From Podarcis erhardii (Eukaryota), in NCBI GenBank assembly GCA_964252035.1, contig OZ176207.1: a DNA stretch of 64,000 bases; one strand, 5' to 3'. The notes beneath the pieces were generated by a model. It saw only the letters and a program-made list of their open reading frames with translations, did not search any database and was not told the DNA's origin. The position numbers and the translations under genes are program-made. Of this stretch, positions 2,965 to 41,950 are shown one piece after another (position 1 is the stretch's first letter; every line of letters starts with the position of its first letter).

Positions 2965-3053
2965 CATTTGCTGATGCAAGAATCATGGCTTGAAGCATTT
3001 CTGTATCAAACTGGTTGTTTGGCCAAGTCCCATTCTCATCCCCATTCTGAGAC
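2965..3053 (-). CDS. PCDHG: Protocadherin gamma constant exon 2 (89 bp)
   Basis: Encodes [29 protein letters not shown]. Acceptor TCCTTAG| and donor AATG|GTCAGT; its phase-2 start fits constant exon 1. Confidence 0.97.
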
Positions 3054-14227: not shown

Positions 14228-14286
14228 CCACTGGTTCCTGGTCTCTGGGCCTGAGAGAAACGCCAGTCTGTGTTAGGTTGTGCTTG
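14228..14286 (-). CDS. PCDHG: Protocadherin gamma constant exon 1 (59 bp)
   Basis: Encodes [20 protein letters not shown]. Acceptor CTTGCAG| and donor GG|GTGAGT; length and phase match the mammalian exon. Confidence 0.97.
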
Positions 14287-17200: not shown

Positions 17201-17810
17201 CTCATGGGTTTCTTCTTCCACAACAGGACTCCCCTTGCCTCTAGCCCCCCCCCCGTCCCACTCGCTGTGCACCACCTAACTCTGTGTGGAGGTTCCTCAA
17301 CTCTCTGGAGCAGATTTGGGGAGAGTTTGTGGAGCATGTGGAGAGGAAGAATGGGGGAGGGGAGGGGGCAGACCCCATTTCACAAGCAGAAATCCTTGCA
17401 CGGATGGGATGCATGTGTTGGATTATCACCCTATATATTTGTTTTATTATAATATTTTTATACCACCCTTTAATCATATCCCCAGAAGTCCCAGTCAAGA
17501 GCAACCACTGCACATGCATTCTCCTCTCACCCCAATTTACCATAGAACATCCTGGGGGGGAGGCAGTTGGAGAGAGTGTAGCATGGAAAGAAATGAAAGC
17601 CCTACATGCACCTTGTAAAAAGCATAATAGCTGCAAAATGAAGGAACCCCGGGATGTCACCCTCCACAACACACACACACATGCATACACACCTCATTTA
17701 CCTCTTTACACCTAGCAGATGGAAGTCTATGGTAGATAAATATGGTAGATAAATATGGATTTATGGATTGCAAGCAGAAATGTTTTAAGAATCACTTTAG
17801 TGTATCTTAC

Positions 17811-20246
17811 CCCATCAGAGGGACTCTGCAAAACACTGCCTGCCTGCTCAAAGGCAAGCATGCTTTCTGCTGTAGTGGAATGACTGAAAGGTTTAACAAA
17901 AAAGAATTCGCCCTGTTCAGACATTGGAGAGAGACAAGACTTGTAGTGCTGAGCTCCAGCTCCGCCCACTTCAAGGTATCTGATAAAGCCTTCGGGATGT
18001 GGGCGCCCAGTGAAATTTATGGTGGATTTCCTGTCTGTCCTCTTACTACAGCAGTGTGACATGAACCAGCTGGGGACACAGAGGCCAGATCGGAAGCACC
18101 TGGCCCCCACAATAACCAACATTACACAAGAGACCAGAGAGATGGCCACAAGAGAGATGATAAGGTAGAGAGTTAGGCTGGGGGCTCTGGAAGGTGATTT
18201 GGGGAGAAGGTCCAAGGACTTGGAAAAGTCCTGCACAGCATTATCCTCTGAGGAAATCACAAGAACCAGTGAGGCTGAGAGAGACGGCACTCCATTGTCT
18301 CTTACTTCTATCACCAACCTGTGGGACACCCCAGGCTCCCTCAATGCCCGAACAGCCCGGATCTCTCCTGAGTGGCGTTCCACTTTGAACGGGGTGGCTT
18401 CATTGGCATCCTGAAGCAAACTATAGGACAGCCAAGCATTGTGGCCACTGTCAGCATCCACAGCCACCACTTTGGTCACCAGGAATCCAGGTTCCACCGG
18501 GAGCAGAACTGGCTGGTGAAAGGCAGAGCCCTTGGAGACTTGCGGGTGCACAATCACCGGGGCGTTGTCGTTCTGGTCCACAACAAACAAGTGAAGAGTG
18601 GCTGTGCTGCTCAGGGGTGGGAAACCCGAATCCTTCACCTCCACTGCAACTTGAAAGACTTTCTCTTGCTCATAGTCAAGCATCCTGGATGTGTAAATGC
18701 TGCCATTCTCTTGGTTGATGTGGAAATAGGTCGAAATGGGTAAGCCATGATTTCCATTGTCCAGAATGGAATAAGACAGCTTGGAGTTGACACCTGCATC
18801 CGGATCTGAGGCTGACAGAGAAAAAACTAGAGTCCCAGGGGAAGTATTTTCCTCCACATGGGCAGTGTATGAAGGGATGGAGAAAGTGGGTGCATTGTCA
18901 TTGACATCTGAGACTTGAATAAATATGTTTTTGTGGGTGGATTTTTGAGGCATTCCAGAATCTGTTGCTTTAATTGTGATATTATATCCAGCAGCCTTCT
19001 CTCGGTCCAGGGGCCCATTGGTCACCAGTGAATAATGTCCCTTAAAGGAAGACACCAGTTTGAACGGGATGTGCCTGGTAATCTCCAAGTGGACTTGCCC
19101 ATTTTCCTCAGAGTCGTTGTCCTTTGCTTGGATCAGGGCAATGACTGTTCCTGTGGGTGCATCTTCTTGCACTGGGCTAGAGAGGGAGGTCAGCATAATC
19201 TCTGGGCGGTTGTCATTGACATCAACAAGTTCCACTCTGATGTTGCAGTGACCCTCCATGGCAGGGGACCCCTTGTCTTTTATGTAGATAGCTATCTCGT
19301 AAGCATTGGCTTCTTCATAGTCCAGCAAAGCTTTGGTCCTGATCTCCCCTGTCTGGGGATCCAAGCTAAATAAGTCAAGGAGCTTCAGAGGTGCGCTATT
19401 GCTGGCTTTGAGGAAATACTCCATCTCTCCATTGGGACCTTCATCTAAGTCCGTAACATTGAGCTTAGTTACGACAGTCCCCACCTGGACATTTTCCTCC
19501 AAATAAACTTTGGACACTGGCGGGTCACACACAGGGGGGTTGTCATTTGCATCCAGGACGTGGACTGTCACCTGGGCAGTCCCAGACTGAACAGGATTCC
19601 CACTATCCAGAGCTGTCAGGACTAAGTGATGGACAGCGGCTTTTTCCCTGTCTAGAAGCTTCTCCAGCACAATTTCGGGCATTTTGACCCCGTCCCCCCT
19701 GACGTTAATGCTCAAGGCAAAATGTTCGCTTGGGCTAAGCTCATAGGTGGCAATGGAGTTGGAGCCCGTGTCCGGGTCTTCGGCGGCTTCCAGGCGCAAG
19801 CGGGTGCCCGGGTTGGCCACCTCGGTGATTTCCAAGGAAACCCTGTCCTTCGGGAACTTGGGGGCGTTGTCGTTCACGTCCAGGATCTCCACCTCCACCC
19901 GGTGGAGCTGCAGGGGGTTCTCCAGCACCAGCTGGAGGGGGAAGGAGCACGTGGGGCTGGAGCTGCACAGAGCTTCGCGGTCCAGCCTCTCGTGGACCAG
20001 CAACATGCCGTCGGCGAGGTTGACGTGGAAGTAGTGGCGCATCCCGTCGCTGACCAGCTGCAGGCGGCGAGCGGACAAGCTCCGCACGTCCACGCCTAGG
20101 TCCTTGGCCACGTTCCCCACGGAAGAGCCTGGGTCCCGGTCCTCTGGGATGGAGTAGCGAATCTGCGCGGGGATGAGCCCTGGCAGGGACAAGACGGCAG
20201 CCACCAGCGCCAGCAGCTGCCACGACCAGCTCTGCCCGCCGCCCAT
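17811..20246 (-). CDS. Extra C-type-like protocadherin gamma variable exon X3 (812 codons), the last variable exon
   Basis: Intact cadherin exon; first ATG at 20246 (the track start is TTG). Donor GGG|GTAAGA, phase 0. Confidence 0.92.
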
Positions 20247-20900
20247 GCCTGGCTCCTTTGCGCGCAAGGATGGCCGTCTCCAGCGGCTGCCTCTGCTCCA
20301 GGTATCCAGCCCGGGGGTGGCCGCTGCTGCCTCCGGACCCCGCCGCAGTCCGGTGCCCCCCGCCCCGCCCCCCAGGTCTGCTCCTGGCGGCTCCGGGGTG
20401 ACCTGAGAGGTGCTGTGCAGCGGAAAGGCGCGGGCTGCAGCTGGAGAGGCGGGAGGGGGGGGAGCGGGGGGATTTTAAAGCGCTCGGATCAGCAGCAGCT
20501 CATTGGCAAAAGGAGCAGCAGAGAAAAGGGGCTGTGAAATGGATACAGACAAGCGGCAATTCCCTCCTCGGCGGCGGCGGCGGCAGCAGCAGCAGCAGAG
20601 AAGCCCCTTCCCCGAAACGCACACACACCCTGCTGCTCCCCCCTCCCCAATCTCTCTTGCCACCAGTTTTCCCTCCCTGCGCTTCCCATTCCTTTCCCAG
20701 CGCAGCAGAGAGATTTGGAGGGCTGACCCAAGGGAGCCATTGGCCAGAAGAGCTCCCTTGATGCCCCTTTGGTGGAAAAGCAGGAATCGAAGGTGCAGAA
20801 CGCAGACAGGGCGAGCTGCTGACGGCAGCTGTAACTCCAGGAGGGGGGAGGGGGCTACTCTACCCTCCTGCAACCTCTTCACTTCAATCCCCTCCCCCTC
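19660..20900. promoter_or_regulatory. CpG island over the X3 promoter and EC1-EC2
   Basis: High GC and CpG density; (GCG)/(GCA) repeats at ~20570-20597; CCAAT boxes at 20502 and 20739. Confidence 0.8.
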
Positions 20901-21108
20901 CCCCCCCCCCATAAAGAAAGAGAGGAAAATTAGGCACACAAAGCTTTGGAGCAGATAGGTGCAATGTATCACAGCCTATGCTTGAGACCACGCACTGATT
21001 CCTCACCCCCACCCCAGGCACTTCTCCTAGGTGCAGGGAAACTCAAAAGAAAAGAAAGGTGGTGCCATGGCGGGAACAAAATAGGGACACTACATGGAAA
21101 ATTCTCAC

Positions 21109-23547
21109 CTTGCCAAAGAAGCTGGGTTCAGTGAGATTGCTGCAAGAGGCTGTCCTAAGTGTCAGATTAGGTTTCATGAATACAAATTCGCTAATGTCTG
21201 AGACAGGAGAAAAGCAGGATCTGTATCCGCGGGCAGGGGGTCCAGAAGTGGCCACTTGCACTCCTATCATGGCATCTCCAGGGCTCAGCTGATAATGGCA
21301 ATGTCCCATCACGTGATCTGAAGCATCCTGAAGCCCACCAGCTTTGCTTCCACAGCATCCAAAGATGGTAGATGTTGCATGTGAATCACGGCGGAGGCAT
21401 CGGACTCCCAAGGCCACCAAAGCCATCAGCGAGATGGTGGAAATTGCTGCCAAGGAGATGATAAGGTACACAGTCAGTGTGGGAGGTCCCTCAGTTTCCA
21501 CTGAGTGAGCTGTTAACCCCAGAAAGGTTTCAGGGCTGCTCTCCTCCAAGAGCACCATCACAGTGACTGAGGTGGACAAGGAAGGATCACCTGAGTCTTT
21601 GACAACCAGGACAAGGTCCTGGGTAGGATTGTCTATGTCCTGTAATGCTCGTGTAGTCCTCACCTCCCCGCTACGGAGGGCCATGCTGAAAATACCAGGG
21701 TCTGTGGCTTGCTCAACATGGTAAGAGAGCCAAGCATTTCGCCCAGAGTCCAAGTCCACTGCCATAATTTTTGTGATTAAGGCATTGGCTGCAGTAGATC
21801 GTGGAATTCTGAACTGCACAACAGAATCTTTCCCAGTAAAGGGGAATCGAATCCAGGGTGCATTGTCATTCTGATCTAGGAGGTAGATGTGCACCATGAT
21901 TCTGCTGCAGAGAGGAGGGGAGCCACCATCACATGCCTCCACCAGGAACTGAAAATGATTCGTATGCTCGTAATCAAAAGGGCTCTCTGCAAAGACATCT
22001 CCATTTGTTGGGTTGATGGAGACATAAGAGGTGAGGTCCTCAATCAATCCTTGCCCTGGGCTCGCCAAAACAGAATAAGACAAACGGGAGTTCTGGTCCT
22101 TATCAGAATCTGTTGCAGAAACTCTAAGCAGTACCACCCCCACTGGATTGTTCTCTTCTATGACGGCTTCATAAAATGGCCTGTCAAAATGAGGTGGGTT
22201 GTCATTGACATCTGCCAGAGTTATGGAGAAAGAGGTGTGCTCAGAAAGAGGTGGATTCCCCAAGTCAAAGGCATAGATGGTGACGTTGTATTGCGGAGTG
22301 CTCTCACGATCTAGCTGCTCACTGGTGAGCAAGGAATACTGGTGCTCAAAGTCTTTCCGAAGTTTGAAAGGAAGGTTTCTGGGCAGATCACACCGGACTT
22401 TCCCTTGATCCCCAGAGTCTCTATCCTTGACATGTATCACAGCAACCACAGTGCCAGGAGGCGCATCTTCACCCATAGAGCTGGAGAAAGAGGTGAGAAT
22501 AACTTCAGGTGCATTGTCGTTGACATCCGTGACTTCTACCATAACACTGCAGTGTTCCTCCATAGTAGGGGAGCCCATGTCCTTAGCCTCCACTTCGATC
22601 TCATAGACATTAGCCTCTTCAAAATCCAGGTTCCCTTGGACACGGATCTCTCCCGTAGTCTCATTGATAGCAAATATCCTGCGCAAGGCTTCTGAGTTAT
22701 GGCTGCTGAGGGAATACTGCACCTCTCCGTTAGGCCCTTCATCCAAGTCTGTTGCGTTCAGCTTAATCACCAGAGTTCCTGGAGGAGAGTTTTCTACTAA
22801 GCGGGTATAATAAGTAGGTTTGTCAAAAACCGGATGATTATCATTGGCATCCAGAATGTGGACAGCAATTCGAATAGCGCTAGATTTGGGTGATATGCCC
22901 CCATCTTCAGCTGTCAGGACCAAGTGGTGGACAGCAATGTGCTCCCTGTCCAGGGGTTTCTCCAGTACTAGCTCTGGGAATTTGGTGCCATCTGTACGTG
23001 CCTTCACGTTGAGGTTGAAGTTCTCATTGGCGCTGAGGTGGTAGGTCTGTAAAGTGTTAGTTCCTACATCTGAATCCTGTGCGTGTGGGATGGGGAAACG
23101 GGCACCCAGTGCAGCCAGTTCATAGATCTGCAGAGATATTGTGCTACTTGAGAACACAGGCGCATTGTCGTTGATATCCAGAATCTCCACTTCGATGCGA
23201 TAGAACTCCACTGGGTTTTCAATAGCAAGTTTGAGATGCAAGAAACAGCGCAGGTTCTGCCCACAGAGCTGCTCCCTGTCTATTCTGTCATTGACTATTA
23301 TGATTCCAGTGTTCACATTCACAGAGAAATACTGGGAGTCAGAATCAGAAAGCACCTGCAGATTGGCAGCTGCAAGCTTTGTCACATCCATTCCTAAGTC
23401 CTTAGCAACATTTCCTACAAAGGCTCCTCGAGTGAGTTCCTCTGGGACAGAGTAACGGATCTGTGCAAAACAGTCACTCAGAAACAGACAGAAGGCAAAG
23501 GCATGCACGAGTCCCAAACGCCAGGCAGAGTTTTCTGTTCTGAGCAT
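21109..23547 (-). CDS. Extra C-type-like protocadherin gamma variable exon X2 (813 codons), downstream of C5
   Basis: Intact cadherin exon; first ATG at 23547 (the track start is GTG). Donor AAG|GTGAGA, phase 0. Confidence 0.92.
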
Positions 23548-23786
23548 CTTTCTGAAATCCACAGCAGGAAGCTCTAAAACTGCAAAACAGGAGCTAAATA
23601 TAGCAGGCAGTATCTCTTTAAACCTCTGGAGGATTCACCACCTATCTCGAAGAAATATGAAATATATGAGAGGGAAAGGGTCTGTGGTCAGTGTTTACCT
23701 CTCTCATTCATTGTTTTGGTTTGAGAGAGATTGACACAGGAGGGGAGTGGTACACACCGCAGATCTTCAATGCTAACCTCCTGCTC

Positions 23787-23857
23787 ATTGGCTGAGACTG
23801 CCTTTCTATTTATCCAATCAGCAGCCTCCTTCCCAGGACAGCAACACACGCACCAAT
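23787..23857. promoter_or_regulatory. Cluster of three CCAAT boxes upstream of exon X2
   Basis: ATTGG at 23787-23791, CCAAT at 23814-23818 and CCAAT at 23853-23857, 240-310 bp upstream of the ATG at 23547. Confidence 0.5.
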
Positions 23858-24684
23858 CCAAGTCTGGAAGTTGCTACTGTGTGAAAAAGGACCGCGTAAC
23901 CTGCTGTTTTTAACCTAGAGACACCAGGCTAAAAGGCAGACAATGGAAAACAAAGCCCAAAATCTTGTCTGGTTTTGGCTTCTGTGCTAGCTATAGGACT
24001 CTTAGAAGCATACGCTGCAAAGAAATGTTTGCTCTAAAAGCACACTGACTCCTCACGTATTACATCCACAACAGAACAGCTGATTTGTCATTTTTATGAG
24101 CAAAGATAATTCAATGAATTCTAGGAAACAATAGTTCCTCTTACCCCAACCTAAGCTTCCAGATCAATCTCTTTTAGGTATTTCTAGGCTACCAAATTAA
24201 TACTGTATCTAGCTTTATTTACCGGTATTTCAGAAGCCTTAGACTCCACCCTTCCAATGTAAAAACTCAAGGGAGTGATTGGTTTTTCTTAGAGAAAGAA
24301 ATCTAATTGTACGGGGGGGGGGGGAGAGACTTAGCAGTTGCAAAAATACAAAAAGCTAACTTTGTGACAGGCAGCATTTGAGGGATGATTTTAAATTATC
24401 ATTTTCTTATTGTTCACATCCTAGTTCCAGTCCCTGCTCCCCTACCCACTTTCTCTCATTAAAAGGCAGCAATTTGTGGGAAGAAATCAATGTAATTTTC
24501 CCCACTCTCCTGCTCTCTCTTTCCCAAGGCGTTATCACTATTGTGCTGCAGGGTTAAATTATGAAGAAGGAGGCCCCACCCTATTCTGATAACTGATGAA
24601 TCAGCCCTCAGTCAAGTTTCAAAGTGTTACTGGAGACACCAGATTCATGTGGGAAAGGAGAAAAAGGACAAAATGCCACCTCAC

Positions 24685-27135
24685 CTGCCTGGGATGGTTC
24701 AGTGTATCAGTACGAGATAAGAAAGTGTCAAAGTCTCTCGTCAGAGTACTTGGTTGAGGGTAATCCACAGGCCTCATAAAGGTGAAATCACTTCTGTCCG
24801 AGCCGGGAGAATAGCTGGCTCTATAGCACTGGCTCTGGGAGTCTGTGGGCCTGAGTGTGACCTCCATGTATTTCAATGTGCCATCTGAGTTCAGTTGAAG
24901 TTTAGGGCTGGATTGTTTGAAAACATCCCTGGCAGGAGCACTACTCAGGCTGCAGCAAGAAGAACCCCTGGCTTTTTTATTCCGAAAGCATTTTGCAGAC
25001 AGGATTATGAACGTAACGAGGGACACAATGCTAACTGCCACCAGCGCAATAATCAGATAGAGGGTCAGGTCAGATTTTTCTTTGGGGTGAGTCAGGAAAT
25101 CATGAGACTGGGGCCTTTCCTCAGTTACTTTATCCTCCAATGAGACCACAATGGTGACGGTGGTAGACAAAGGTGGTTCTCCATTGTCCTTCACTAGTAC
25201 AAGGATTTTCTGTGCCGGGAGATCTGTTTCCTGGAACTCCCGAACAGTCCAAATTTCCCCAGTGTAGGGAGCCACTCGGAACAAGGAGGGGTCAGTAGAC
25301 TGGGAAAGCAAGGAGTAAGAAAGCCAGGCATTGTGGCCCGAGTCTGCATCCACGGCAGTGACTTTGGTGACCACGTAGCCTGCCGATGCAGACTGAGGGA
25401 TCCTCTGGATTGCAGACAGTTCCCGACCAGTCACTGGGTGCAAAACAACAGGCGTGTTATCATTCTGATCCATTATGAAGAGGTAGACAGTGACACTGGA
25501 GCTCAGTTGGGGTGACCCAGCATCATGCACCATGATGGGGATTTGCAGCACCTGCAGCATTTCATAGTCAAAAGAGTGCTGGGCATAGACATTCCCATTG
25601 TCTGGGTTGACGTAAATGAAAGAAGAGACTGGAGCATCTTGAATTGGGCTTCCTGCCACTGAGTACATGAGCCGGGAATTGTCCCCCTCGTCAGGATCAG
25701 AGGCCGCCACAGTGCATAGCAGAGAGCCAGGTGGATTGTTCTCCTTCAAGAAGGAGTTGTAGAAGGGCTGAGAGAAGTACGGGGCATTGTCATTAACATC
25801 TGAAATGTTCAGCATGATGGTGACATCTGTGGTTAGAGGTGGGGACCCTGAATCTTGGGCCATCAACTTGATAGTGTATCGAGAAACTGTTTCTCTATCC
25901 AGCTTCTCAGTGGTAATCAAAGAATAGTGGTTTTCAAAAGATTTAATTTTAAAGGGCAAGTTGGGTGATATTTGTAAGCTCACCTTTCCATTGGCACCTG
26001 AATCTTGGTCTCGCACATTGAAAAGCCCTACCACTGTCTCTAAAGGGGTGTTTTCTGGCACGGGGTTTACCAGAGAGGTAAGGAGAACCTCTGGAGGGTG
26101 GTCGTTCTCATCTTCAACTTCCATTTGGATTACACAATGGCCTTCCATTTGAGGAATGCCCTTGTCCCTGGCCCTTACATGAAGCTCATAAAAATGAGAT
26201 TCTTCGAAATCCACAACTCCTTGGACACGGATCTCACCTGTGTGGGGATCCAAGCCAAACAACTTCTGGATGGAATCAGGTGTGTGGATTCCAAAGGAAT
26301 ACTGTATTTCCCCATTAGAACCTGCATCAGGGTCAGTTGCATTAAGTCTGAAAAGCAAAGAGCCTACAGGGATGTTCTCCAAAAATCTTATCTTGTACAA
26401 AGGAAGGTCAAATGCAGGCTCATTATCATTATTATCCAGGACCACAATGGTGATCAGAGCTGTTCCTGACAGTACAGGATCCCCCCCATCACAGGCAGTC
26501 AGGATGAGCTGGTGTTCCGATTGTTGCTCTCGGTCCAAAGGTTGCTCTAGCACCAGCTCAGGTAAAAGCTTGCCATCGTTCACATTCTTTACATTAAGTG
26601 AGAAGTGGGGGTTGGGGCTGAGTCGGTAGACACTGACTGCATTGGTCCCCACGTCCGCATCATGAGCGCTCTCCAGTGGAAAGCGAGACCCTGTGGCGGC
26701 AGACTCTGCTATCCTCAGCACAAGCTTGGGGGTGAGGAAACCGGGGGAATTGTCATTTAAGTCCAGGATCTCTACCTCCAGGTGAAAGAGCTCCAAGGGA
26801 TTTTCTATGACTACTTGGACTGGCAAAATGCACCCCGAGCTTGCTCCACACAGGGTCTCTCGGTCTATCTTTTCATTCACTATCAGAGCACCGTTGGCCA
26901 AGTTAACTGCAAAGTACCTCTTGCTCTCCTCAGAGCCCAGCCTCAGCCTGCGACGGGAAAGGTCTGCCACCGTTAAGCCCAAGTCCTGAGCCACCTTTCC
27001 CACCACGGTGCCCAGCTCCGATTCCTCCACCACGGAATAGTGGATCTGTCCTGTAACCAACGCCCGGCTGAACAGCAAAAACAAACCCAGTACTTGCCAT
27101 TTGAAAGAGGGTTGCCAGGACAAATGTGGCTCCAT
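24685..27135 (-). CDS. PCDHGC5: Protocadherin gamma C5 variable exon (817 codons)
   Basis: C5-specific YSVVEESE, RLGSEE, EGHCVIQ, TVVGLFNVRD, GSLLCTVAASDPD, and tail KQSSPKLQLNSDGTLKYMEVTLRPTDSQSQCY. Donor CAG|GTGAGG. Confidence 0.96.
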
Positions 27136-28663
27136 TTCAGAAAAAAGTCCCCTTCCAGAAGGAGTCTTTGTGATATCCCAGGGATAAGGAGGCTCCAGGA
27201 CCTGGACGAATGCTGTTTTTTAAATCCCTCGGTATTTCCTTCCAAATGAGTTAAAGTAGCTTTTGAGCTTGCCTAGCTGCAGCAACAGAATGTTAGTCAG
27301 AGAGTTGAGGGGGTGGATTGGGGGAGGGAAGCTGAATTACAGCCATAGCGACGGAGGAGGAAAGTCAAGGCAGAAAGAGCTGATCCCCCCTCCCCCCAAA
27401 ATCTGGATCAGCACCTGACTAGATGACAGCTCCATCCACTCTCCACCAGTGACAAGTCCACCTACACTCTTAAAGCTGCTGCAGCACATGAAGTTGGGAG
27501 ACCAGGACTGATCACCCCCATACCTCAACCCTAAATGTAACCAAGAGGCTGGTTTGCCACTGGTTTTGGCAGCTAAGTTTAGCAGCTCAGATTCTTGTTC
27601 TCAAGGAAACAGCACGTCCGGGAAGCATGAACGGTACAAATCCTCATTGTTCACATTAGCTAGATTCATTCCATCTCATCTGAACAAAAGACAAACTCTC
27701 AGCTGTAGGGGATACAGAATCATAGTCTCTCTGGCGAACAACTGGTCTGATTTTTCACTTGCAGTGAAAAAGGTATTTGTTACAGTCGAAAAGAGGAAAG
27801 ATAGGGAGAAACTCTCACAGAAAGTGCTTTAGCATTTTGCAACGCAGCTTCAATAAATGCATTTAAAACTCTTAGTCATTACCAAGGCAAAACAGACCCT
27901 TTCAGAATGTTCATTTTCAAATGCAGACATGGGAACCTCCACCACACAGTGAAGAATGCACAATCTTCAAAATTGCTTAAGGCCTCCCAGCTCTATTCAT
28001 TGGCCTTTCCAAAATTAGAACACCACAATCAATGCAGCAGTATTTCTAAGTAGAACCATTGTAACCCAAAGACCATGGTGTGGCTTTGAATGTCAGGGAC
28101 CCACATACCAAGTAGTTTTTAAGCTGTGGTGTTAAGGCACTTTCCAATAATGCGACACCCAAGTACAGATTCACAGAACTGTGATGGACTCAGTGAGTGG
28201 ACCATTTTTCTTAAGATGGGGTGCCTCATTCTTGATGCACCCCCGACTTATGATCCTTAGCACTTTTTCTTTCCCCTCTTTCCACCAAGCTTTCAAAAAC
28301 ATCAGAAAAACAAATATTTGACAACCTCCCCTGGAAAATCATTTAACTGCTGGATTTATTTTTCGGTTAGAAACTTTTTGCTGCTTGTTAATCTAAATCT
28401 AAGTACCAGTAGTTTAAAAGCATTACTTCTTGCCAAATATCCACAGGGTGAACAACTGCTAATCTTCCCAAGCTTCTTCTAAAATAGCCTATCTCCTTGA
28501 AGAATCTAAAATCCAACAAAATGCTTTTTAATTTACAAACTGACCACCTTAATACAAAGGCTGCCTGACATTGCCATTGCATCTGTGACCTTATCTCTGG
28601 AGATTGTTACAGAATCACAGGGTGCTACATGACATAGTTATAGAACAGTATTTCATGCCTCAC

Positions 28664-31108
28664 CTCGTTTGGCTCTTGGGAAAGGCTGCAGGCCGGAAGT
28701 GTGCCTGTGCTGTTGATATCCTGCTGAGTGACTGGTGTAGCTATCCTGAAATTCCTCCCTACTGAAAAGTGGGTCTGGCCAGGCCTTAGGAGGGTAAAAG
28801 GAGAAACAACATCTCCCCCAATGAAGGCTGTAGGGAATTCCATTTTTTCCTCCTGGCTCAAGCGTACTGAGAACGTGTCAAAGTGTCCTCCCACAGGAAT
28901 AGAGTTCCTACCCTTCAGGTCGCTGGTCCAACCCACATCTGAGTGTCTTCCTTTCAATCTTTTAAGACACTTCATAGATAAAAACACAAAGGCTAGAGCA
29001 GAAAGTCCTGAGATTGTGATTAGAGCAATAATGAGTTGCAAGGTCAGGTGAGATAGCCCTTCTTGTTCCATGCTGGACTCTCTGAGGTCTGCTGTGCCCA
29101 ACTCATGCTCATGCTCTAGATTAAGAATCAGAGTGGCTGTGGCAGACAGAGGTGGCTTCCCATTGTCCAAGATCTCAACAACCAACTCTTGGGAAGGGGC
29201 GTCTTGTTCCAGGAGGGCTCGGACGGTTCGGATCTCTCCTGTGAACGCCGAGACTTGGAAAAGGCTTGGGTCTGTGGCTTGCAGCAACTTATAAGAAACC
29301 CATGCATTCTGCCCAGAGTCTGCATCCACAGCTGTGACTTTGGTTACCAGGTAACCTCCTTGTGCAGAAAAAGGGACTGGCTGCTGGGCTAGGACCCCCT
29401 TCTTGGTTACAGGGTATACAACGAGAGGAGCATTATCATTCTGGTCTATGATGAAGATGGAGACAGTCACGTTGGCACAGAGTGGAGGAGAACCATTATC
29501 CTTAGCTTGAATCTGGAAAACCAGTTGCTGGGTTTGCTCATAGTCAAATGAGCAGCCACTGTAGATAGTACCGTTCTCCATAACATAGACATAGGAGGAA
29601 ATGGGCATTCCATTTACGATATGCTCCACTAACGAATAAGACAGGTGTGAGTTCTGCCCCAGATCAGGGTCAAAGGCAGATATAGAAATGATTGGCAGCC
29701 CCAGAGCATTGTTCTCAGCTACGAGGGTCTCATATGCAGGCTGTGAGAAGTGGGGTGGGTTATCGTTCAGGTCAGATATATTTATAAGGAAGTTTCTTTG
29801 ACTGGAGAGAGGTGGAGAACCAGAATCCGTAGCTGTGATCATAACTTTGTACTGTGAGATTTCCTCCCGATCTAGGGGGCCACTGGTGATCAAAGAGTAG
29901 TGGTTCTTGAAGGAAGGTACAATCTGGAAGGGGACATCTGCAGGGAGATGAAGCTGTACCTCTCCATTTTCCCCAGAATCTGCATCACTGACTCTGAGGA
30001 GCCCTGCTGTGGTACCTGGGGGAGCATCTTCTGGTATGGTGGTGGTGAGGGAAGTGAACCTAATGATAGGCTCATTGTCATTCACATCCACTACCTCCAC
30101 TAAGATGTTGCAGTGTGCATCCATGGAAGGTGACCCTTGGTCTTTGGCCCTCACATCAATTTCATACAATGTGTCATCTTCGTAATCCACACTTCCCAGG
30201 ACTCTTATCTCCCCGGTCTCCTCATTAAGGCTGAACATTTTCCGGATTTTCTGTGGAGTGTGGTTGCTGAAGGAGTAGGAAACTTTCCCATTTGCCCCCT
30301 CATCATTGTCTGTAGCTTGTAAATGTATCACAAGGGCCCCCACTGGGGCATTTTCTAGAAGGCTAACTTTGTACACCGACTGGTTAAAGACAGGTGGATT
30401 GTCATTGGCGTCTATGACTGACACGAGAATCTTTGCTGTCCCGGATTTAGCAGGAACTCCTCCATCCAGGGCTGTAAGCACCAGTGGGTAGCGCTGCTGT
30501 TGTTCTCTATCCAGCGCCTTTTCTAACACCAGCTCAGGTTTGCTGCCACCTTTATGTGACTTAACACTGAGGCTGAATTGTCCACGTGGACTCAGCTGGT
30601 AGGTGCTGACTGAATTCATGCCAATATCCAAATCTTCAGCACTTTCCAGGGGGAAGCGGGCCCCTGGCATTGCAGACTCTGCTATCTCCAAATGGGTGAG
30701 ACTGGTAAGAAAAACTGGGTCGTTGTCATTCACATCCAAGAGCTCAACTTCCACACGATGGGAGGCTGTTGGGTTTGCAAGTAGGAGCTCCAGATAGAGC
30801 AGGCAGTGTAAGCTGGGTCCACAAAGCTGCTCTCGGTCCAGCCGTTCTTTCACGACCAAGACACCATTTGGCACCTTGGCTTCGAAGTACTTTTCAGCAG
30901 AGCCAGCCATGATCTGCAGCTGTCGGGAGACCACCCGAGCAGCATCTAGACCCAAGTCTTTAGCCACATCCCCAACAAAGGCCCCAGGAGCTAACTCCTC
31001 AGGAATTGAATAATGGAGCTGGTCTCCAGCACACTGGAGAGAGACAGAAACCAAAAGCAAAGCTCTTACTTGCCATGGCAGGAGTAGTCTTTCTTCCAGA
31101 GACAGCAT
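28664..31108 (-). CDS. Extra C-type-like protocadherin gamma variable exon X1 (815 codons)
   Basis: Intact signal peptide, EC1-6, TM and tail. Donor GAG|GTGAGG, phase 0. Lacks the diagnostic EC1 and tail motifs of C3, C4 and C5. Confidence 0.9.
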
Positions 31109-31254
31109 AATGTCGCCAAAATTTCCTCTTCCTTTGCTGGACCTCTATCCTCTCTGATTCCAGCACAGCCAAGGAAACGACACAGAATCCTGGGTTAGAT
31201 CGCGCAAGGGATGAGAAAGCGGCGCACCATCTGCATCTTTTCTCTGTTTTTCTT

Positions 31255-31285
31255 CCACAGAAAACAGCGGCGGTGCCTAGTCCGT
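31255..31285 (-). promoter_or_regulatory. CSE-like element upstream of exon X1
   Basis: Minus strand GACTAGGCACCGCCGCTGTTTTC keeps the GCCGCTGTT core and the upstream GACT of the other two CSEs; ~155 bp from the ATG. Confidence 0.6.
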
Positions 31286-31799
31286 ATCGGAATCAAGAGG
31301 GGAGGAGCTTTGTTGTCCATCAAAGCAGATACAGGGCTCCTGGAATCAAGGAAGCGCCTGGCTGTTTGCAATGGACCACCCATTCTCCCCCTCCCCAGCT
31401 TCAGCAATGGTGTGGGGGAGGTCTTAAAGCGCCAGTGCAAATGTTGAAGAAGAGCTGGGAGCCCACTTGCCAGCTGTCAGTGACTGGATTTCCCAAGATA
31501 ATTATATGAACAATAAATCCTATGTCATTACAAGCTTTTGAATTCATTAATGAATGTCACAAGCATTTAAATTCAATAATGAACACTCTTTGTTTGGAAT
31601 GGTTGGGGTTATAAGCTAAACCAGCAAACTGCATATTTTGCAGATTTTTTTTAAAAAAACCAGAATGCAACAAATACCAGTGGCTGCACAATTGATATAC
31701 TGCCATTTGCTGGATATAAGATCACGTTAAAAGACCCATTGATTGTCTGCCTGAATTTCCTTTAAATGAATGGCATTCCATAACCGGTGCAGGAGAGCT

Positions 31800-33460
31800 C
31801 TTCAAAGCTCATTCCCACTATGGCCTTTGTTCTCCAAATGGAGTATACTAAGAGTCTCTCCATATTTCCTTTCCTAAATTTCAGGAGTTTTGCAGCCAGT
31901 GCACAAAACAGAATAAACCATGACATCACAAAGGAAATTTTTAAGCCTCTGGAGTCAAAGGTTAGGAGGAGCAAGGTTAAAAAGAGTTTTATGAGCAAGA
32001 ACCTGGTCCCTGAGGTTCCCAACAAACAGCTTCCATAGTGGAGACAACTAAGATAATAGTTAGGGAAGGGGTCAGGTCAAGAAGATTCATGGACTTCCTG
32101 GAAAAGATGAAAGAAATCTATGAATAGAAGTATTTTCTCTCCCCTAAAGGTAGACAATGCCTTCTGAATGTTGTCATGGTGGACTTCAGTGAAGAGGTAG
32201 ATGAGGCACACTGCTGTTGAAAAAGTGGTGTCCTCTGTCTTATGTGCATTAGAAGCACCTGGATTTGCTCCTAGTGGCATCATGTGAGGATGAGAAGCTG
32301 GGCACCTCCTGTGTGTGAGATTTCACAGTAGAAATGAAACAGACAGAATGTATTTACGGTGATGGTTCTTCTCCAGGAGTACTGTGCAGATAATATAGGG
32401 CAATGATCACAGGTTGTTCGTATTGCATTTGTTATTCTGTTAGCTAGATTGGTCTTCACTGTCCAGAGGAGTATTTGTGACTAAAACCTGGTTTTGAAAC
32501 ATGGCCCATGGCTTTAAACACAGGCATCTGGGAATACTGGCAATCACTGCTGCTCCACTGCCTCTGGAGTGAGCTGCTTGCTATGTGCAGAGACATGCTC
32601 TCTGGCATGGACAAAGTTTGTTTTGACCAAGGTACAATCTTTTGGGTATTTGGGGACATAAAAAATGTGCACCACCATATGTTCCATGGCAAAGACGCCC
32701 ACCTCATTTTAACATTAAACTTATAGCTTCTATTTTATAGGCAAGCCTCCTTTTCACCACAGCTGTGACTTCCCAATAGTCACATAATGCCACAGCTGGA
32801 GTATAGTTGCATCGGGTGGAGTCCCCCTATATACGGAATTGCCATACTAAGTAAGGTGTTGCTCCAATATAGAGCTTTCAGGACCAAGCAATGCTCAACT
32901 TCCTTAATTCCCGGTCAATGTTTTCCAAAGAAGCAAGTTCAGATCTCTTCACATCAACAGAAAAGAAAGTCTTAACAAGTAAGTGATGATGGAACTGCTG
33001 CTTGTTCTACTAACCAAGGAATGTTAATTTCTCTGATTCTAAATATCTCTCTGTGTCACAGGCCCTGGAGAGGGTAGGAATCGTCAACACCTGCATTTCC
33101 AACTTCTGCCTGATACATTTCCATGGATCTTACATCCATCTTGACTCCATGAAGGAGCTTGGCTCACATGTACACAGGGACTCACGGTTTACAGGTTCCT
33201 TTCAAAGCAGTAAAAATCTATTTCCACAGTTATCATCTCACTAATCAACTATTATATAGCAGTTGTTTGGGGATGCAATTTCCCGTTCTTTGCTATGATT
33301 TCTATGTAACCTAAACTCACCCTTCTAGTCCACTTGGACTAGTGATGGTCAGGGATTGGCACAGTGCCTGGGCAGAGAGCGCAGAACAATTAGCAGCATC
33401 CACAAAACTCCTGCAGGGTGGAAGCACCTTGAGATTCTGGACTCAGGCTACATCAAGAGC
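31800..33460 (-). pseudogene. PCDHGC4: Decayed PCDHGC4 orthologue (pseudo-exon)
   Basis: Collinear minus-strand remnants resembling human gamma-C4: NRESLC (33172-33192), EMYQAEV (33101-33121; human EMYRAEV), DVKRS/EL..LE..DRE (32908-32955; human DVKKRSDG..PELLLEKPLDRE), AMEH (~32680), PES and an SG..IPD-like segment, FQNQ/LVTNTPLDSEDQSS (32440-32499; human FRNQFSLVTAGPLDREAKSS), and a TM-like ISFV..F.AL.AKLL (~31880-31945). Lies between C3 and C5. Many stops and frameshifts. Confidence 0.75.
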
Positions 33461-34049
33461 AATTTTCTTCAGCTCAAGAGTTTGTATTTGTATATTACAA
33501 CACCAAAAATCACAATATCAAATACATTCCTTGACTTACTGATTCTGCCTTTTCTAATGCCTGAGGATACACATTAAAAAAAACTTAAGGATACTATTGT
33601 TTATAATGAATGTTGTTATCTTGATAATACCAATGTCTTTATACACTCTTGCTTATCTTGAATTCACCTGCACATAACATTCAACTTTGCAATCCTATTT
33701 ATTTTCAGAATCCATTTAGTCGCAAATAGCACGCATACTGTACAGATATTTCTAACTAGTTATATACAGTCTTGGTTCACAGAGCTACGAACGCTGCATA
33801 GCAAGCTAAGTGGCTTTGAAAGATGCAAAGCCACTTGGCTTGGTTTAACTAACACACATGAATTATACTACAGGACACTGTGCTAAACTTCACAGGAAAC
33901 AGTATTTGATGAGAAGCATTCAAATCAGTTCCTAATGCACACTTGTGCCATTTAACTTAATGGAATGGAAAAGAAATTCTGTATTCTAAACCCTTGTCTT
34001 TAATGAAATCACAATAAATATTTGGTGCAAAGGAAAACATTTCAACAAT

Positions 34050-34720
34050 AGAAATAGGAGACCTTGTAATTAGGATTTGAGAAGAGTGGGGAGACTGATA
34101 TCTCACTTCAAAATCTGAAATGTGATTGAGTTTGATTGCTTTAGACTTTTTGGACAGTCAATGACTATTTTCTAGGTTCAAGATTGTAGACAAGCAAGCA
34201 AGAGGGAAATTTGAAATGTTGGGGGTCAACATACAGTAAGTTTCATTACATTCTCCCATCCCCCTACACTAAACTTGTTTGTGAAAGGCACCATAAGATC
34301 TTGAGTGGGGTCTCTGGGCAGGGATTGTGTATGTTTATTGCTGTCAAATCTCATCCAGTGGCAGATGGCTAGACAGCATGATGTTAGCCAGCTCTTTCCA
34401 CTCTTTGTCTTCCATTATCTTTACAGAAAAACAAATATGGTAACATTCTTGCATTGCTCTAGATTAGATGTATCTAATCATAAAGTTTCTGATCTTGGAT
34501 TCTCCTGTGTTGCTTTGGCTGCATATATGCTCATCTTAATTTTCAAAGTGAGATTTCTTCTTTCCAATCTCAACATCCTATAATTTAGGGATACTTGTTA
34601 CAAACTAGAAGACCAGTGTGTTTGGCAATAAACCCCACAGCATATGAAGCTGTCGCTTGCATTTATTTCAGTGCACAAAGCGCAGCAGGTCCTGGACCCT
34701 TGCAACATATTTTCAAGCAC
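34050..34720 (-). pseudogene. Very old protocadherin variable-exon relic (EC1-EC3), subtype unresolved
   Basis: Collinear minus-strand fragments: FSVK..KEL (~34405-34440), a GCCACTGGATG ALDG-like piece, VYxxxLENS (34163-34195), and IKLN followed by a SDFE-like piece (ATDLDEG equivalent; 34110-34136). Many indels; read by eye. Confidence 0.5.
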
Positions 34721-35361: not shown

Positions 35362-35363
<2 letters not shown>

Positions 35364-35399
<36 letters not shown>

Positions 35400-35400
35400 C
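35364..35400. repeat. (CAT)n microsatellite
   Basis: Direct reading. Confidence 0.95.
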
Positions 35401-38112: not shown

Positions 38113-38154
38113 CTACTCCTACTCCTACTCCTACTCCTACCCCTACTCCTACTC
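38113..38154. repeat. (CTACTC)n hexamer repeat
   Basis: Direct reading. Confidence 0.9.
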
Positions 38155-38750
38155 ATGTTTGGCTACATAGAGAATAGGTTCAATTCCACCATACACATAA
38201 GGAAAAGGAATAAGTCTTACATTTCCATCCCATCATAGATGAATATCAAACAGACATACATCAGAAGCTAGGCCCCCAAGGAAATGTTGAAGGTGATCTC
38301 CCTTTAGCGTCTTGAAGAAGCACCCAAGCCAAAAGGCCTCCCAATACACATCCAACCCATTATTTACACAGCATTACTGTTTCCTTACATATGATTTTTC
38401 GTAAAACATAAACTTACTGGGAACTATCATTCTTCAGAGGCAATGACTATGCAACCCAATGACAGCTGACCACATTGATCTGACCCAGAGCAGAAAGAAC
38501 AAACCACCCAACTCCATGTAATGTAGGAAGGAAACAACACATGCACAGGAGTTAAACAGGCGGGGCGCTTAATCATGCTATTAAATGACACAGCACTAGA
38601 TGGAGACAGAAAACAGGAAAAAGAATGTGTTCTACAGGAACTACCCTGTTTCCGGGTAGAAAGACATTGAGTGGTCTGCCTTTAAGTCAACTTAAGCTCA
38701 GAGCTGGGATTTCCCAACTTTGTTGGAGAAGGACAACAAGCATACATTAC

Positions 38751-41195
38751 CTCAGAGGACACCAGAAGCCTCTTATTTGTGCTTATTAGCTGGTTATATA
38801 TTGCAGGGTCACATCTTGTGATAGTACTCTGGCGGCTCCCCATAGGGCTGGGAGCAAAGGGCATTTTGTACAGAAGTTCACTCTGGCGAGAGTCCGTGGT
38901 GAGGACCTGCTGGTAGAAGTTTGGAGGAGTAAATCCACTCCGCACAGTGTCTATGTGGTTGAAAGGCCCCGGGGTTCTATAAAGGGAGCTTCTGGAGGCT
39001 TTGAATATATCCTTGGATTGCCTCCACTTGTAAAATTTATAAATCCCCACCCCAACCACGGTGACAAAGAAGGCCACTGAGATCAAGATGACAGCAATGA
39101 TTAAATAGAAAGTCAAGTGCTTCTTTGTTTGGGGTGTGGTGGACACAGCAGTCAAGTCTGTCAGTGTCTCCCTAGATGTCTCTGCTACATCTACAGCAAG
39201 GGTCACTGTGGAGGACAAGGCAGGCTCCCCATTGTCTTTTATTAAGATGAGCAATGTTTGCTTGCGAGAATCTTCCTCTTGCAGAGAACGAGCTGTGCTT
39301 ATCTCCCCAGAATGCAGCCCCACAGTGAACAGCCCTGGGTCAGTGACCTGAAGGAAGGAATACGAGAGCCAGGCATTGTAACCAGAATCTGCATCCCAGG
39401 CCACAATTTTTGTGACCATGTAACCAGGGCTGACTGTGGGTGAGATGACTTCTGAGAGCGAAGAACTGTTGTTTGAGTTTGGGTATAAGAGCCTGGGTGC
39501 ATTGTCATTCTGATCTGTGACAAAAACATTGACAGTGATGTTAGTGGCGAGAGGCGGGAGGCCAGCATCACGAACCTGGACCACTAGCCTGAACTCCATG
39601 GTGCCCTCATGGTCCAAGGGGACTAGGACATATATGCTGCCATTTTCCCGGTTAATAGAAAAATACCTGCCCGCCAAGTCTCCCGAGGACATGGGACTAT
39701 CCAGGATGGAGTAGGAAAGGTGGGAATTCCGGTTCAGATCCGGGTCAGAGGCACTGATGTTAAAGATCAGGGCCCCTGGAAGGTTGTTTTCCTCCACATA
39801 CACATCATAGGAGGATTGTGGAAATTTAGGAGGGTTGTCATTTACATCAGATACTTTAACCAGTATTTGCTTTTCTGCCATGAGTGAGGGTGTGCCTGCA
39901 TCCTGAGCTGTGATGGTGATGTTGTACTCAGAGACAAGTTCCCTGTCCAAGGGTCCTTTGGTCTGTAAGGTATAATAGTTTTTAAGGGAAGAGCTGAGGG
40001 CAAAAGGGATCCCAGAAGGTATAAAGCAATTTACTAGGCCATTATCACCAGAGTCCTGATCCGTGACACTCAGCAACGCAATCACAGTCCCTGGAGCAGC
40101 GTCTTCTGGTATTGGGCTGTACACCGACGTCACTGTTATTTCTGGGGTGTTGTCGTTCACATCCACAATCTCTACCAGCACTTTGCAATGAGCGACACCA
40201 GGATTTGAACCCTTATCTTTTGCCTGGATATAAATCTCATAAAATTTGGCTTCTTCAAAATCCAGCAACCCCTTCAGCCTCAGTTCTCCAGTGGCAGAGT
40301 CTAGGGCAAAGAGCTGTCGGACTCTGGCAGGGGTGTGACTGCTGAAAGAGTACACAATCTCCCCATTGGGGCCTTCATCCAGGTCGAAAGCGCTGGTTTG
40401 GACAACCAGGGTGTTCAAGGGTGTGTCTTCTTTCACGCTGGCTCTGTAGATGGACTGGTTGAAGACAGGAGCGTTGTCATTTGCATCCAGGACGTCAACC
40501 AGCACCTGCAAGCTGGCCGATCGGGGTGGGGTCCCTCCATCCATCGCCGTGAGAACCAGCTGCACTTCCCGCTGCTGCTCCCGGTCCAGCTCTTTCTCCA
40601 GCACCAGCTCCGCATACTTCGTCCCGTCGCCTCGCGTCTGCACGTCCAGCACGAAGTGCGGGTTGGCGCTGAGCTGGTAGGTCTGCAGAGAGTTGCTTCC
40701 CACGTCGGGGTCCTGCGCGCTCTCCAAGGGGAAACGCGCTCCGGGGATCACCGACTCGCTGATCTCCAGCTTCATTTGCTTGCTCTGGAAAGCCGGGTCG
40801 TTGTCGTTGACGTCCTGGATCTCCACGGTCACGCCGTACAGCACCAGCGGGCTCTCGGCCACCACCTCCAGGCTCAGCGCGCACGGCGAGAGGGCCCCGC
40901 AAAGTTCCTCGCGGTCGATGCGCTCGCTCACCAGCAACTTCCCGCTGCCCAGGTCCACCTCGAAGTACTTTCGTCCGCCGCCCGACACCACGCGGAGGTT
41001 CCTGGCGGGCAGCTGGGCGAGATCCAGGCCCAGGTCGCCCACCACGTTGCCCACCGAAGAGCCCCTGGGCATCTCCTCGGGGATGGCGTAGCGCGTGGCG
41101 GCCAGCGCCCGCTCCGAGACGCCCAGCCACAGCCAGAAGCCCACGACTGGCAGCCATCGCGCTCTCGGCCGGCTCCTTCCCGCGGCGCCTCTCAT
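38751..41195 (-). CDS. PCDHGC3: Protocadherin gamma C3 variable exon (815 codons)
   Basis: Gamma-C3-specific stretches: AHCKVLVEIVDVNDNTPEITVTSVYSP, SSSLKNYY, QSSYDVYVEENNLPGA, and cytoplasmic YKWRQSKD..SSLYRTPGP..TTDSRQS..SRQST..CDP. First ATG at 41195 (the track start is TTG). Donor GAG|GTAATG. Confidence 0.95.
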
Positions 41196-41950
41196 CTCCC
41201 GGCCTCGCAAAGTTTCTTTCTTTTTGCGGGGGCGGCGGCGAGGTCCCTCTAAAAGTTTTCAGCCGTCCCTTCCATGCGGCCGCGACCCTGCCCGCTCCAG
41301 GCTCGCCTCGCGCGGACTTGGGGGCTCGGGCATTGCTCGGCGGCGCGGCGCTCCGGCGGCGGGACTGCGCTCCGTCTGTTGCTGGCGCTCAACTCGCGGC
41401 GGCGGCGGCGGCGGCGGCGTCCCACTTCGCGCTGCTTCGCCGCCAGCATCGCCGGGTCAACAGCGGCGCGCAGAGTCGCGACCATTAACTGCAGGAGAGG
41501 CCGCTCCCGCTCCGCCTCCCCGGCTCGCCGCCGGGACTCCGAGGCACGAGGCGCACGGCACCATCCAAGCGGGGCCGGCGGGGCCCGGTGGACTTCTTTT
41601 TTCGGGGGGGGCGGGGGTGTTCCTCGGTGAAAGGCTTGTGGAGGCTGCCCCCTAGGCTGCACAGCCCTCCCCGCTCTGCCGCCGCGAGAGGGGGCGAAGG
41701 GAAGCGCGGACCAAGGAGGCAGCAAGGGCTCATTGTTCTCGCTGGGGAGCGTGGAGGAAGGGCTGGACCCCGGACGCTTCCCAGGGATCGGGAGAGAGAT
41801 GCCCGCCCGCCTGCCTCCGGTGCCTCCGCCTCTGGCTCCCTCGCTTACGCTCTCCCGGCGTGGCGGCTCTGTGGGGCAGCCCAGTGCTCCCCATGCACAG
41901 CACTGCTCAGGGAGAACCCGCAAGCCCCCCAAGGCGGTGGAAGCTTCCCC
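40430..41950. promoter_or_regulatory. CpG island over the PCDHGC3 promoter and EC1-EC2
   Basis: Very high GC and CpG density, including a (GCG)n run at ~41397-41418. Composition changes sharply near 40430. Confidence 0.85.
41455..41495 (-). promoter_or_regulatory. CSE/CTCF site of the PCDHGC3 promoter
   Basis: Minus strand CCTGCAGTTAATGGTCGCGACTCTGCGCGCCGCTGTTGACC aligns with the 55931-55975 element; ~260 bp upstream of the ATG. Confidence 0.85.

What the first reader, a model, noticed from the sequence alone, without database searches (positions are those of the whole stretch)
17811..31108. Three intact C-type-like exons (X1, X2, X3) with no mammalian counterpart, two of them downstream of C5
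Seen: the order is C3, relics, X1, C5, X2, X3, constant exons. Each X exon has an 812-815 codon open frame, its own promoter features, and a phase-0 GT donor compatible with constant exon 1. Established: mammals have only C3, C4 and C5, with C5 last, while non-mammalian clusters are known to carry extra C-type genes. Inference: this is a different C-type repertoire (C3, X1, C5, X2, X3) that may include the replacement for C4.
Basis: partly seen in the sequence, partly recalled or inferred. Interest (0 to 1): 0.7.

Follow-up and report, generated by a model that had tools for sequence, protein, structure and literature searches.

The report
Extra lizard protocadherin-gamma C-type exons
Three intact extra "C-type" protocadherin-gamma exons sit at the end of this lizard's nerve-cell recognition gene cluster and have no mammalian equivalent, but they match the gamma-c4, c6 and c7 genes described in the green anole in 2009, so they are real but not new.

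Summary
On the minus strand the order is C3, X1 (31108-28664), C5 (27135-24685), X2 (23547-21109), X3 (20246-17811), then gamma constant exon 1 (14286). Each X exon is an uninterrupted open frame of 812-815 codons. Each encodes a signal peptide, six cadherin repeats and a membrane anchor, and ends at a phase-0 GT donor.

Gene models of sister lacertids join exactly these ends to the constant region. The exons are under purifying selection (dN/dS 0.02-0.24).

They are already named. X1, X2 and X3 are the orthologues of Anolis gamma-c4, c6 and c7 (Jiang et al. 2009, PMC2764143). That paper already reported five gamma C-type genes, no human orthologue for these three, and differential loss as the cause.

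My tree and synteny agree and widen the picture:
- X2 and X3 also occur in turtles, crocodilians, birds and amphibians.
- X1 occurs in squamates and turtles.
- A bear has only C3, C4 and C5, with no relic after C5.
- X1 occupies the C4 position but is not its orthologue. A sea turtle carries both a dead C4 and an X1 copy.

"Replacement for C4" remains untested.

The parts
28664..31108 (-). X1 variable exon (orthologue of Anolis gamma-c4): 815 codons; donor GT at 28663-28662
24685..27135 (-). C5 variable exon (true orthologue of mammalian gamma-C5): 817 codons
21109..23547 (-). X2 variable exon (orthologue of Anolis gamma-c6): 813 codons from the ATG at 23547; donor GT at 21108-21107
17811..20246 (-). 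X3 variable exon (orthologue of Anolis gamma-c7), the last variable exon of the cluster: 812 codons; donor GT at 17810-17809
14228..14286 (-). Gamma constant exon 1 (59 bases, AG acceptor just upstream).
2966..3052 (-). Gamma constant exon 2 (29 residues, 100% identical to the Podarcis raffonei constant region)
38682..41210 (-). C3 variable exon open frame (orthologue of mammalian gamma-C3). The donor was not mapped
31263..31270 (-). CGCT-box-like CCGCTGTT, 161 bases upstream of the X1 ATG. The same 8-mer occurs only upstream of C3 and of one alternate exon. It is not conserved in Anolis
31430..31555 (-). X1 upstream blocks, nearly invariant between this lizard, Podarcis muralis and Anolis sagrei
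23697..23922 (-). X2 upstream region holding three blocks (at -375, -301 and -173) conserved from lizard to sea turtle and rhea
20460..20570 (-). X3 upstream CCAAT box and flanking sequence, conserved in squamates and partly in turtle, inside a GC-rich promoter (GC 0.67)
18300..18305 (-). GTAAGA inside X3, after codon 647. Predicted 780/781-residue isoforms of other squamates use it as a donor and so skip the membrane anchor

Best explanation
The window holds the 3' end of a lacertid lizard's protocadherin-gamma cluster. X1, X2 and X3 are functional C-type variable exons. They are the orthologues of the Anolis genes published as gamma-c4, gamma-c6 and gamma-c7.

Each exon most likely works like any clustered protocadherin first exon. 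It has its own promoter. Its transcript runs on through the downstream exons. Its phase-0 donor is spliced to the three shared gamma constant exons. The product is a membrane protein of about 946-951 residues, with six cadherin repeats and the common gamma tail.

X1, X2 and X3 are ancient lineages, separate from C3, C4 and C5. The early amniote cluster carried at least six gamma C-type genes in the order C3, C4, X1, C5, X2, X3. Mammals lost X1, X2 and X3. Squamates lost C4. The one bird locus examined carries neither C4 nor X1.

Shown here: intact frames, donor positions, orthology, synteny and purifying selection. Inferred: transcription, splicing in this species, and any C-type-like constitutive expression.
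For: Anatomy: open frames, donors and acceptor; domain content; all calcium-binding linker motifs invariant among the five exons.

Identity with named genes: X1 80%, X2 89% and X3 91% identical to the Anolis carolinensis TPA entries named gamma c4, c6 and c7. Jiang et al. 2009 give the same gene order and the same conclusion.

Splicing:
- Predicted proteins of Podarcis muralis, P. raffonei and Zootoca vivipara pass from the last residues of each exon straight into the constant region, with 134 residues after the junction.
- Jiang et al. state that they confirmed variable-to-constant splice sites by RT-PCR on anole brain cDNA.

Selection: dN/dS against P. muralis is 0.238 for X1, 0.063 for X2 and 0.024 for X3. 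Against Anolis sagrei it is 0.163, 0.118 and 0.073.

Orthology groups: in the careful tree, X1, X2, X3, C5 and C3 each form a clade with 100/100 support. Only C5 and C3 contain the bear.

Synteny:
- P. muralis and A. sagrei: X1, C5, X2, X3.
- Sea turtle: C3, dead C4, frameshifted X1, C5, X2, X3.
- Rhea: C3, C5, X2, X3.
- Caecilian: two C5-like exons, a broken X2-like exon, then X3-like.
- Bear: C3, C4, C5, then the constant exons.

Control against solved structures: the window's C5 scores 464 bits against mouse gamma-C5 EC1-3, while X1, X2 and X3 score only 317-341.
Against: No RNA reads were laid on this window.

The branching order among C4, X1, C5, X2 and X3 is unresolved. On the clean data set a tree joining bear C4 with the X1 clade is not rejected (AU p = 0.446).

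The claim that squamates lost C4 rests in this window on matches that are not significant.

Whether these exons are used constitutively like mammalian C-types is unknown.
Confidence: 0.9

Rival explanations
1. X1 is simply the fast-diverged orthologue of mammalian gamma-C4, as its published name and RefSeq label suggest. On this reading only X2 and X3 lack mammalian counterparts.
For: X1 lies between C3 and C5, exactly where C4 lies in the bear. RefSeq calls it 'protocadherin gamma-C4' in Podarcis muralis. The AU test on the clean set does not reject bear C4 plus the X1 clade (p = 0.446, log-likelihood difference 0.42).
Against: The sea turtle locus holds two separate elements between C3 and C5. 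One is a C4-like pseudogene at L002 3747-5519 (43% identical to bear C4 overall and 33-58% in the separate pieces, 7 stops). The other is an X1 copy at 6454-8870 (64% identical to the window's X1).

In the tree the turtle relic joins bear C4 (SH-aLRT 100, stem 0.56), apart from the X1 clade, which itself contains turtles.

X1 is no closer to human gamma-C4 EC1-4 than the window's C5 is (459 against 468 bits).

Jiang et al. found no human orthologue and paired Anolis c4 with coelacanth gamma-22.
Confidence: 0.08
2. X2 and X3 are recent, lineage-specific duplicates of C5, as the 'gamma-C5-like' database names imply, rather than old separate genes.
For: Nearly all database names for their relatives read 'gamma-C5-like' or PCDGM. 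They lie directly after C5.
Against: They are only 44% identical to C5 and 45% to each other. Each forms its own 100/100 clade. The X2 clade includes a salamander and the X3 clade a caecilian, and inside each clade the branching mostly follows the species tree. The same C5, X2, X3 order occurs in turtle, rhea and lizards.
Confidence: 0.02
3. The X exons are untranscribed or unspliced open frames, and the gene models of relatives are prediction artefacts.
For: Many public models of this locus in birds and turtles are demonstrably chimeric.
Against: The frames are intact, and dN/dS is 0.02-0.24 against lizards and 0.12-0.13 (X2, X3) against turtle and rhea. The X1 and X2 donors are conserved in Podarcis and Anolis. 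Upstream blocks are conserved. Jiang et al. state RT-PCR confirmation of the variable-constant splice sites in anole brain.
Confidence: 0.02

Closest known systems
Anolis carolinensis protocadherin gamma-c4, gamma-c6 and gamma-c7 (Jiang et al. 2009, PLoS One 4:e7614; GenBank TPA entries DAA06627, DAA06629, DAA06630)
   Same: Same position and order in the cluster (c3, c4, c5, c6, c7, constant exons). 80%, 89% and 91% protein identity. Same exon architecture and same splice junction to the constant region. Same reported absence of human orthologues.
   Different: A different lizard family (Lacertidae, near Podarcis). Here the distribution is extended to turtles, crocodilians, birds and amphibians, and the c4 name is shown to be positional only.
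Mammalian C-type protocadherins PCDHGC3, PCDHGC4 and PCDHGC5
   Same: Same cluster end, same exon plan, same shared constant exons, and the same C-type branch of the family tree. C3 and C5 of the window are true orthologues. Like mammalian gamma-c4 and gamma-c5, the window's C5, X2 and X3 lack the CGCT-box 8-mer found at C3 and at an alternate exon.
   Different: X1, X2 and X3 fall in none of the three mammalian orthology groups. X2 and X3 lie downstream of C5, where the bear has nothing. Constitutive, biallelic expression and the survival role of gamma-C4 are known for mouse only.
Coelacanth gamma-20 to gamma-24 and the expanded C-type-like gamma2 14-36 group of Xenopus tropicalis (Noonan et al. 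2004; Etlioglu et al. 2016, PMC4978886)
   Same: Non-mammalian clusters with more than three C-type-like gamma exons at the 3' end. Jiang et al. pair Anolis c4 with coelacanth gamma-22 and c7 with gamma-24.
   Different: Xenopus shows a large lineage-specific expansion, whereas the lizard exons are single-copy and conserved one-to-one.

Membership tests
Clustered protocadherin-gamma variable exon | One large exon encoding a signal peptide, six cadherin repeats, a membrane anchor and a short cytoplasmic part | tested here: met
   Pfam Cadherin_2 plus five Cadherin stretches in each of X1, X2 and X3. Cadherin_C_2 in X2, and in X3 just under Pfam's cut-off. All linker calcium-binding motifs invariant.
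Clustered protocadherin-gamma variable exon | Lies upstream of, and on the same strand as, the gamma constant exons | tested here: met
   Minus-strand order X1, C5, X2, X3, constant exon 1 (14286-14228), constant exon 2 (3052-2966). The constant peptide is identical to that of lacertid gamma isoforms.
Clustered protocadherin-gamma variable exon | A 5' splice site in phase with constant exon 1, used in mRNA | tested here: inconclusive
   Phase-0 GT donors are present at the stated places. Gene models of three sister lacertids join exactly there. RT-PCR is reported for anole only.
C-type subgroup of clustered protocadherins | Groups in trees with alpha-C and gamma-C exons rather than with the alternate A and B types | tested here: met
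   Careful tree: the alternate gamma exons of bear and lizard are split from all C-type rows at 96/93. X1, X2 and X3 lie in a 99/98 group with gamma-C4 and gamma-C5.
C-type subgroup of clustered protocadherins | Constitutive, biallelic expression in neurons, as against stochastic choice | not testable with these tools
   Needs single-cell or allele-resolved RNA data.
Orthologue of mammalian PCDHGC4 (for X1) | One-to-one descent from the same ancestral exon as mammalian gamma-C4 | tested here: not met
   The sea turtle carries a C4-like relic and an X1 copy side by side. The relic joins bear C4 at SH-aLRT 100, apart from X1. The tree alone is inconclusive (AU p = 0.446).
Orthologues of Anolis gamma-c4, c6 and c7 | Highest similarity to those entries, the same clade and the same gene order | tested here: met
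   80%, 89% and 91% identity. The entry names are given. Each pairs with its Anolis entry inside a 100/100 clade. Anolis sagrei has the same order, X1, C5, X2, X3.

The most novel reading that the evidence does not exclude
In lineages that lost gamma-C4 (squamates, birds), one of the deeply conserved extra C-types has taken over the neuronal-survival role that gamma-C4 alone carries in mouse. The best candidates are X3 or X2, whose dN/dS against the sister lacertid is 0.02-0.06. If so, the essential function would belong to a slot in the C-type set rather than to one orthologue. Reciprocal loss (mammals kept C4; sauropsids kept X2 and X3) would mark a swap of the essential isoform.
Probability: 0.15. 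Interest if true: 0.6.

Novelty: already known. Interest (0 to 1): 0.22.

Why it matters
The existence of these exons adds nothing new for a specialist. Five gamma C-type genes in a lizard, three of them without a human orthologue, were published in 2009, and the exons are annotated in RefSeq for sister species.

- There were at least six gamma C-type lineages in early amniotes (C3, C4, X1, C5, X2, X3).
- X2 and X3 are kept one-to-one from amphibians to birds under strong constraint, and are absent from the bear locus and from every mammalian protein in the database searches.
- C4 is dead in a sea turtle, and I found no intact copy in the lizards or the rhea.

Gamma-C4 is the one isoform that mouse neurons need to survive. 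Animals that live without it but keep X2 and X3 are therefore a natural system for asking which C-type function is essential.

A practical by-product: many public bird and turtle models of this locus are chimeras of neighbouring exons and can mislead trees.

Tried and rejected
- **Big representative search with a C-type profile.** The top 150 were giant cadherins and fused models, so it gave no usable mammalian C-type sequences. I obtained bear C3, C4 and C5 from a genomic locus instead.
- **First tree and AU test.** These contained chimeric public models. They produced spurious extra clades and a false rejection (p = 0.00013). Both were dropped after the chimeras were shown segment by segment.
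- **Logan-derived proteins.** I hoped they would be cDNA evidence, but none carries the constant region, so they are read-through genomic frames.
- **CTCF consensus scan.** 16 matches at up to 2 mismatches, none at the usual promoter distance from an exon. Not informative.
- **Search for the C4 relic in the window.** I used bear C4, the turtle relic (DNA and protein) and a C-type profile. Nothing reached significance.
- **Literature search for gamma-c6 and c7.** Nothing beyond Jiang et al. 2009.
- **Joined models.** All exons were searched one by one by reference.
Full report
**What is in the window.** Seven long open frames lie on the minus strand.
- Two alternate-type gamma exons lie at 61573-63951 and 53237-55807.
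- The C-type series follows: C3 (38682-41210), X1 (28625-31108), C5 (24619-27135), X2 (21043-23562) and X3 (17727-20267).
- An AG acceptor is followed at 14286 by a 59-base exon. Its peptide begins the protocadherin-gamma constant region.
- Constant exon 2 is at 3052-2966.

X1 ends at 28664 (GAG|GTGAGG). X2 ends at 21109 (AAG|GTGAGA). X3 ends at 17811 (GGG|GTAAGA). C5 ends at 24685. All four are phase 0 and compatible with the whole codon that opens constant exon 1.

From the first ATG the frames are 815, 813 and 812 codons. The X2 start is the ATG at 23547. Pfam finds the protocadherin N-terminal domain and five further cadherin stretches in each exon. All inter-repeat calcium-binding motifs are invariant among the five C-type exons, which are only 42-48% identical to each other.

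**Which genes they are.** Word-index searches with each exon, made by reference and exon by exon, gave near-identical full-length predicted proteins from Podarcis raffonei, P. muralis and Zootoca vivipara. The window therefore comes from a lacertid close to, but not identical with, Podarcis. Protein identity is 97.7-99.8% and dS is 0.02-0.04.

The cluster look-up gave the decisive names.
- The entries matching X2 include DAA06629, 'TPA_inf: protocadherin gamma c6 isoform [Anolis carolinensis]'.
- Those matching X1 include DAA06627, 'gamma c4 isoform'.
- Those matching X3 include DAA06630, 'gamma c7 isoform'.
- Identities are 89%, 80% and 91%.

These entries come from Jiang et al. 2009 (PMC2764143), which reports:
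- Five gamma C-type genes in the anole (c3 to c7).
- c3 and c5 orthologous to human.
- c4, c6 and c7 without a direct human orthologue.
- c4 and c7 paired with coelacanth gamma-22 and gamma-24.
- A model in which an ancestral cluster richer in C-types was thinned by differential loss.

I found no later open paper on c6 or c7.

**Splicing and expression.** The predicted proteins of the three sister lacertids run from the last six residues of each exon directly into the constant region, with 134 residues after the junction. Jiang et al. state that they confirmed variable-to-constant splice sites by RT-PCR on anole brain cDNA.

I could not add read evidence. I built or searched no joined exon-plus-constant model.

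**Selection.** Codon alignments with genomic loci of P. muralis and Anolis sagrei give these dN/dS values:

| Exon | vs P. muralis | vs A. sagrei |
|---|---|---|
| X1 | 0.238 | 0.163 |
| C5 | 0.206 | 0.115 |
| X2 | 0.063 | 0.118 |
| X3 | 0.024 | 0.073 |

Against P. muralis C3 gives 0.135. X3 is the most constrained exon of the set, and X1 the least constrained but still clearly under purifying selection.

**Orthology and synteny.** I fetched the 3' end of the gamma cluster from several species.
- American black bear: C3, C4, C5, then the constant exons and DIAPH1.
- Kemp's ridley sea turtle: C3, a C4-like pseudogene, a frameshifted X1, then C5, X2, X3.
- Rhea: C3, C5, X2, X3.
- Caecilian: two C5-like exons, a broken X2-like exon, and X3-like as the last exon.
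- P. muralis and A. sagrei: X1, C5, X2, X3.

No protocadherin-like sequence at E of 1e-4 or better lies between bear C5 and the constant exons, or between rhea C3 and C5.

A careful maximum-likelihood tree used 45 rows and 719 columns.
- It was built on genomic open frames, the Anolis TPA entries and single-exon models.
- It gives 100/100 clades for C3 and C5, each including the bear.
- It also gives 100/100 clades for X1 (squamates and turtles), X2 (salamander, squamates, turtle, rhea, gavial) and X3 (caecilian, squamates, turtles, crocodile, rhea).
- No mammal falls in X1, X2 or X3.
- The database searches listed no mammalian protein above about 45% identity, although non-mammalian hits down to 56-59% were listed for X2 and X3 and down to 62% for X1.

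As an independent control, the window's C5 scores 464 bits against mouse gamma-C5 EC1-3, while X1, X2 and X3 score 317-341.

**Is X1 the real C4?** It sits in the C4 slot and is labelled so.
- The branching order among C4, X1, C5, X2 and X3 is unresolved.
- On the clean data the AU test does not reject bear C4 plus X1 (p = 0.446).
- An earlier rejection (p = 0.00013) was an artefact of a chimeric turtle model and is withdrawn.

The sea turtle settles the question. Between C3 and C5 it has two separate elements.
- One is a C4-like relic at L002 3747-5519. Its matches are collinear with bear C4, it has 7 stops and frame changes, and only C4 matches its cytoplasmic part.
- The other is an X1 copy at 6454-8870, 64% identical to the window's X1.

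In a tree the relic joins bear C4 at SH-aLRT 100, apart from the X1 clade, which itself contains turtles. One caveat applies: the relic's residues were collected with bear C4 as the query. C4 and X1 are therefore distinct old paralogues, and the name c4 in Anolis is positional.

There are two collinear minus-strand matches, with tblastn E = 0.08 and profile E = 0.3.

**Promoters.** The 8-mer CCGCTGTT contains the CGCT box of the protocadherin conserved sequence element.
- It occurs three times in the window. All three copies are on the minus strand, 137-255 bases upstream of a start codon: at an alternate exon, at C3 and at X1.
- The X1 copy is not kept in Anolis.
- C5, X2 and X3 lack it. This recalls mammalian gamma-c4 and gamma-c5, which lack the element (review PMC7811963).
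- X1's upstream 450 bases are highly conserved with Anolis.
- X2 has three blocks conserved to turtle and rhea.
- X3 has a GC-rich promoter with a CCAAT box conserved in squamates.

These findings support separate promoters but do not show their activity.

**Verdict.** They are also ordinary, already-named genes. 'Replacement for C4' stays a hypothesis.

Noticed in passing
Proteins P0235, P0233, P0161, P0157, P0198, P0065, P0149 and P0034 (birds and turtles): Public gene models of the gamma C-type exons are chimeras of two neighbouring variable exons, switching near residue 320 or 480 (C5+X3, X2+X3, X1+X2, C5+X2, X1+C5). They created false paralogue clades and a false AU rejection until removed. 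I did not examine whether the shared switch point reflects a propagated annotation error or real exon-to-exon splicing.
   Followed up: partly
window 18300-18305 (minus strand, inside X3, after codon 647): RefSeq holds 780/781-residue X3 isoforms in several squamates (Podarcis, Pogona, Elgaria, Anolis). They leave the exon at this GTAAGA inside cadherin repeat 6 and join constant exon 1. That would give a protein without the membrane anchor. The GTRAG is the Val-Arg codon pair and is also present in turtle and rhea.
   Followed up: partly
L002 3747-5519 and 6454-8870 (Lepidochelys kempii): The sea turtle carries a dead gamma-C4 (7 stops, frame changes) and, next to it, an X1 copy broken into at least four reading frames. 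Terrapene and Chelonoidis models still contain X1-like N-terminal halves.
   Followed up: partly
L005 (Rhinatrema bivittatum) 341-12502: The caecilian cluster end has two C5-like exons in tandem, a broken X2-like exon (6970-9249) and an X3-like last exon. X2 and X3 therefore predate the amphibian-amniote split.
   Followed up: partly
window 31109-38681: The 7.6 kb spacer between C3 and X1 holds no significant protocadherin remnant in my tests. There are only two weak collinear minus-strand matches, at 32443-32580 and 32881-33124.
   Followed up: yes
L004 4092-6122 and 9965-12106 (Bos mutus): Two alpha-C1-like open frames lie 6 kb apart in the yak draft assembly. This is probably an assembly duplication.
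   Followed up: no
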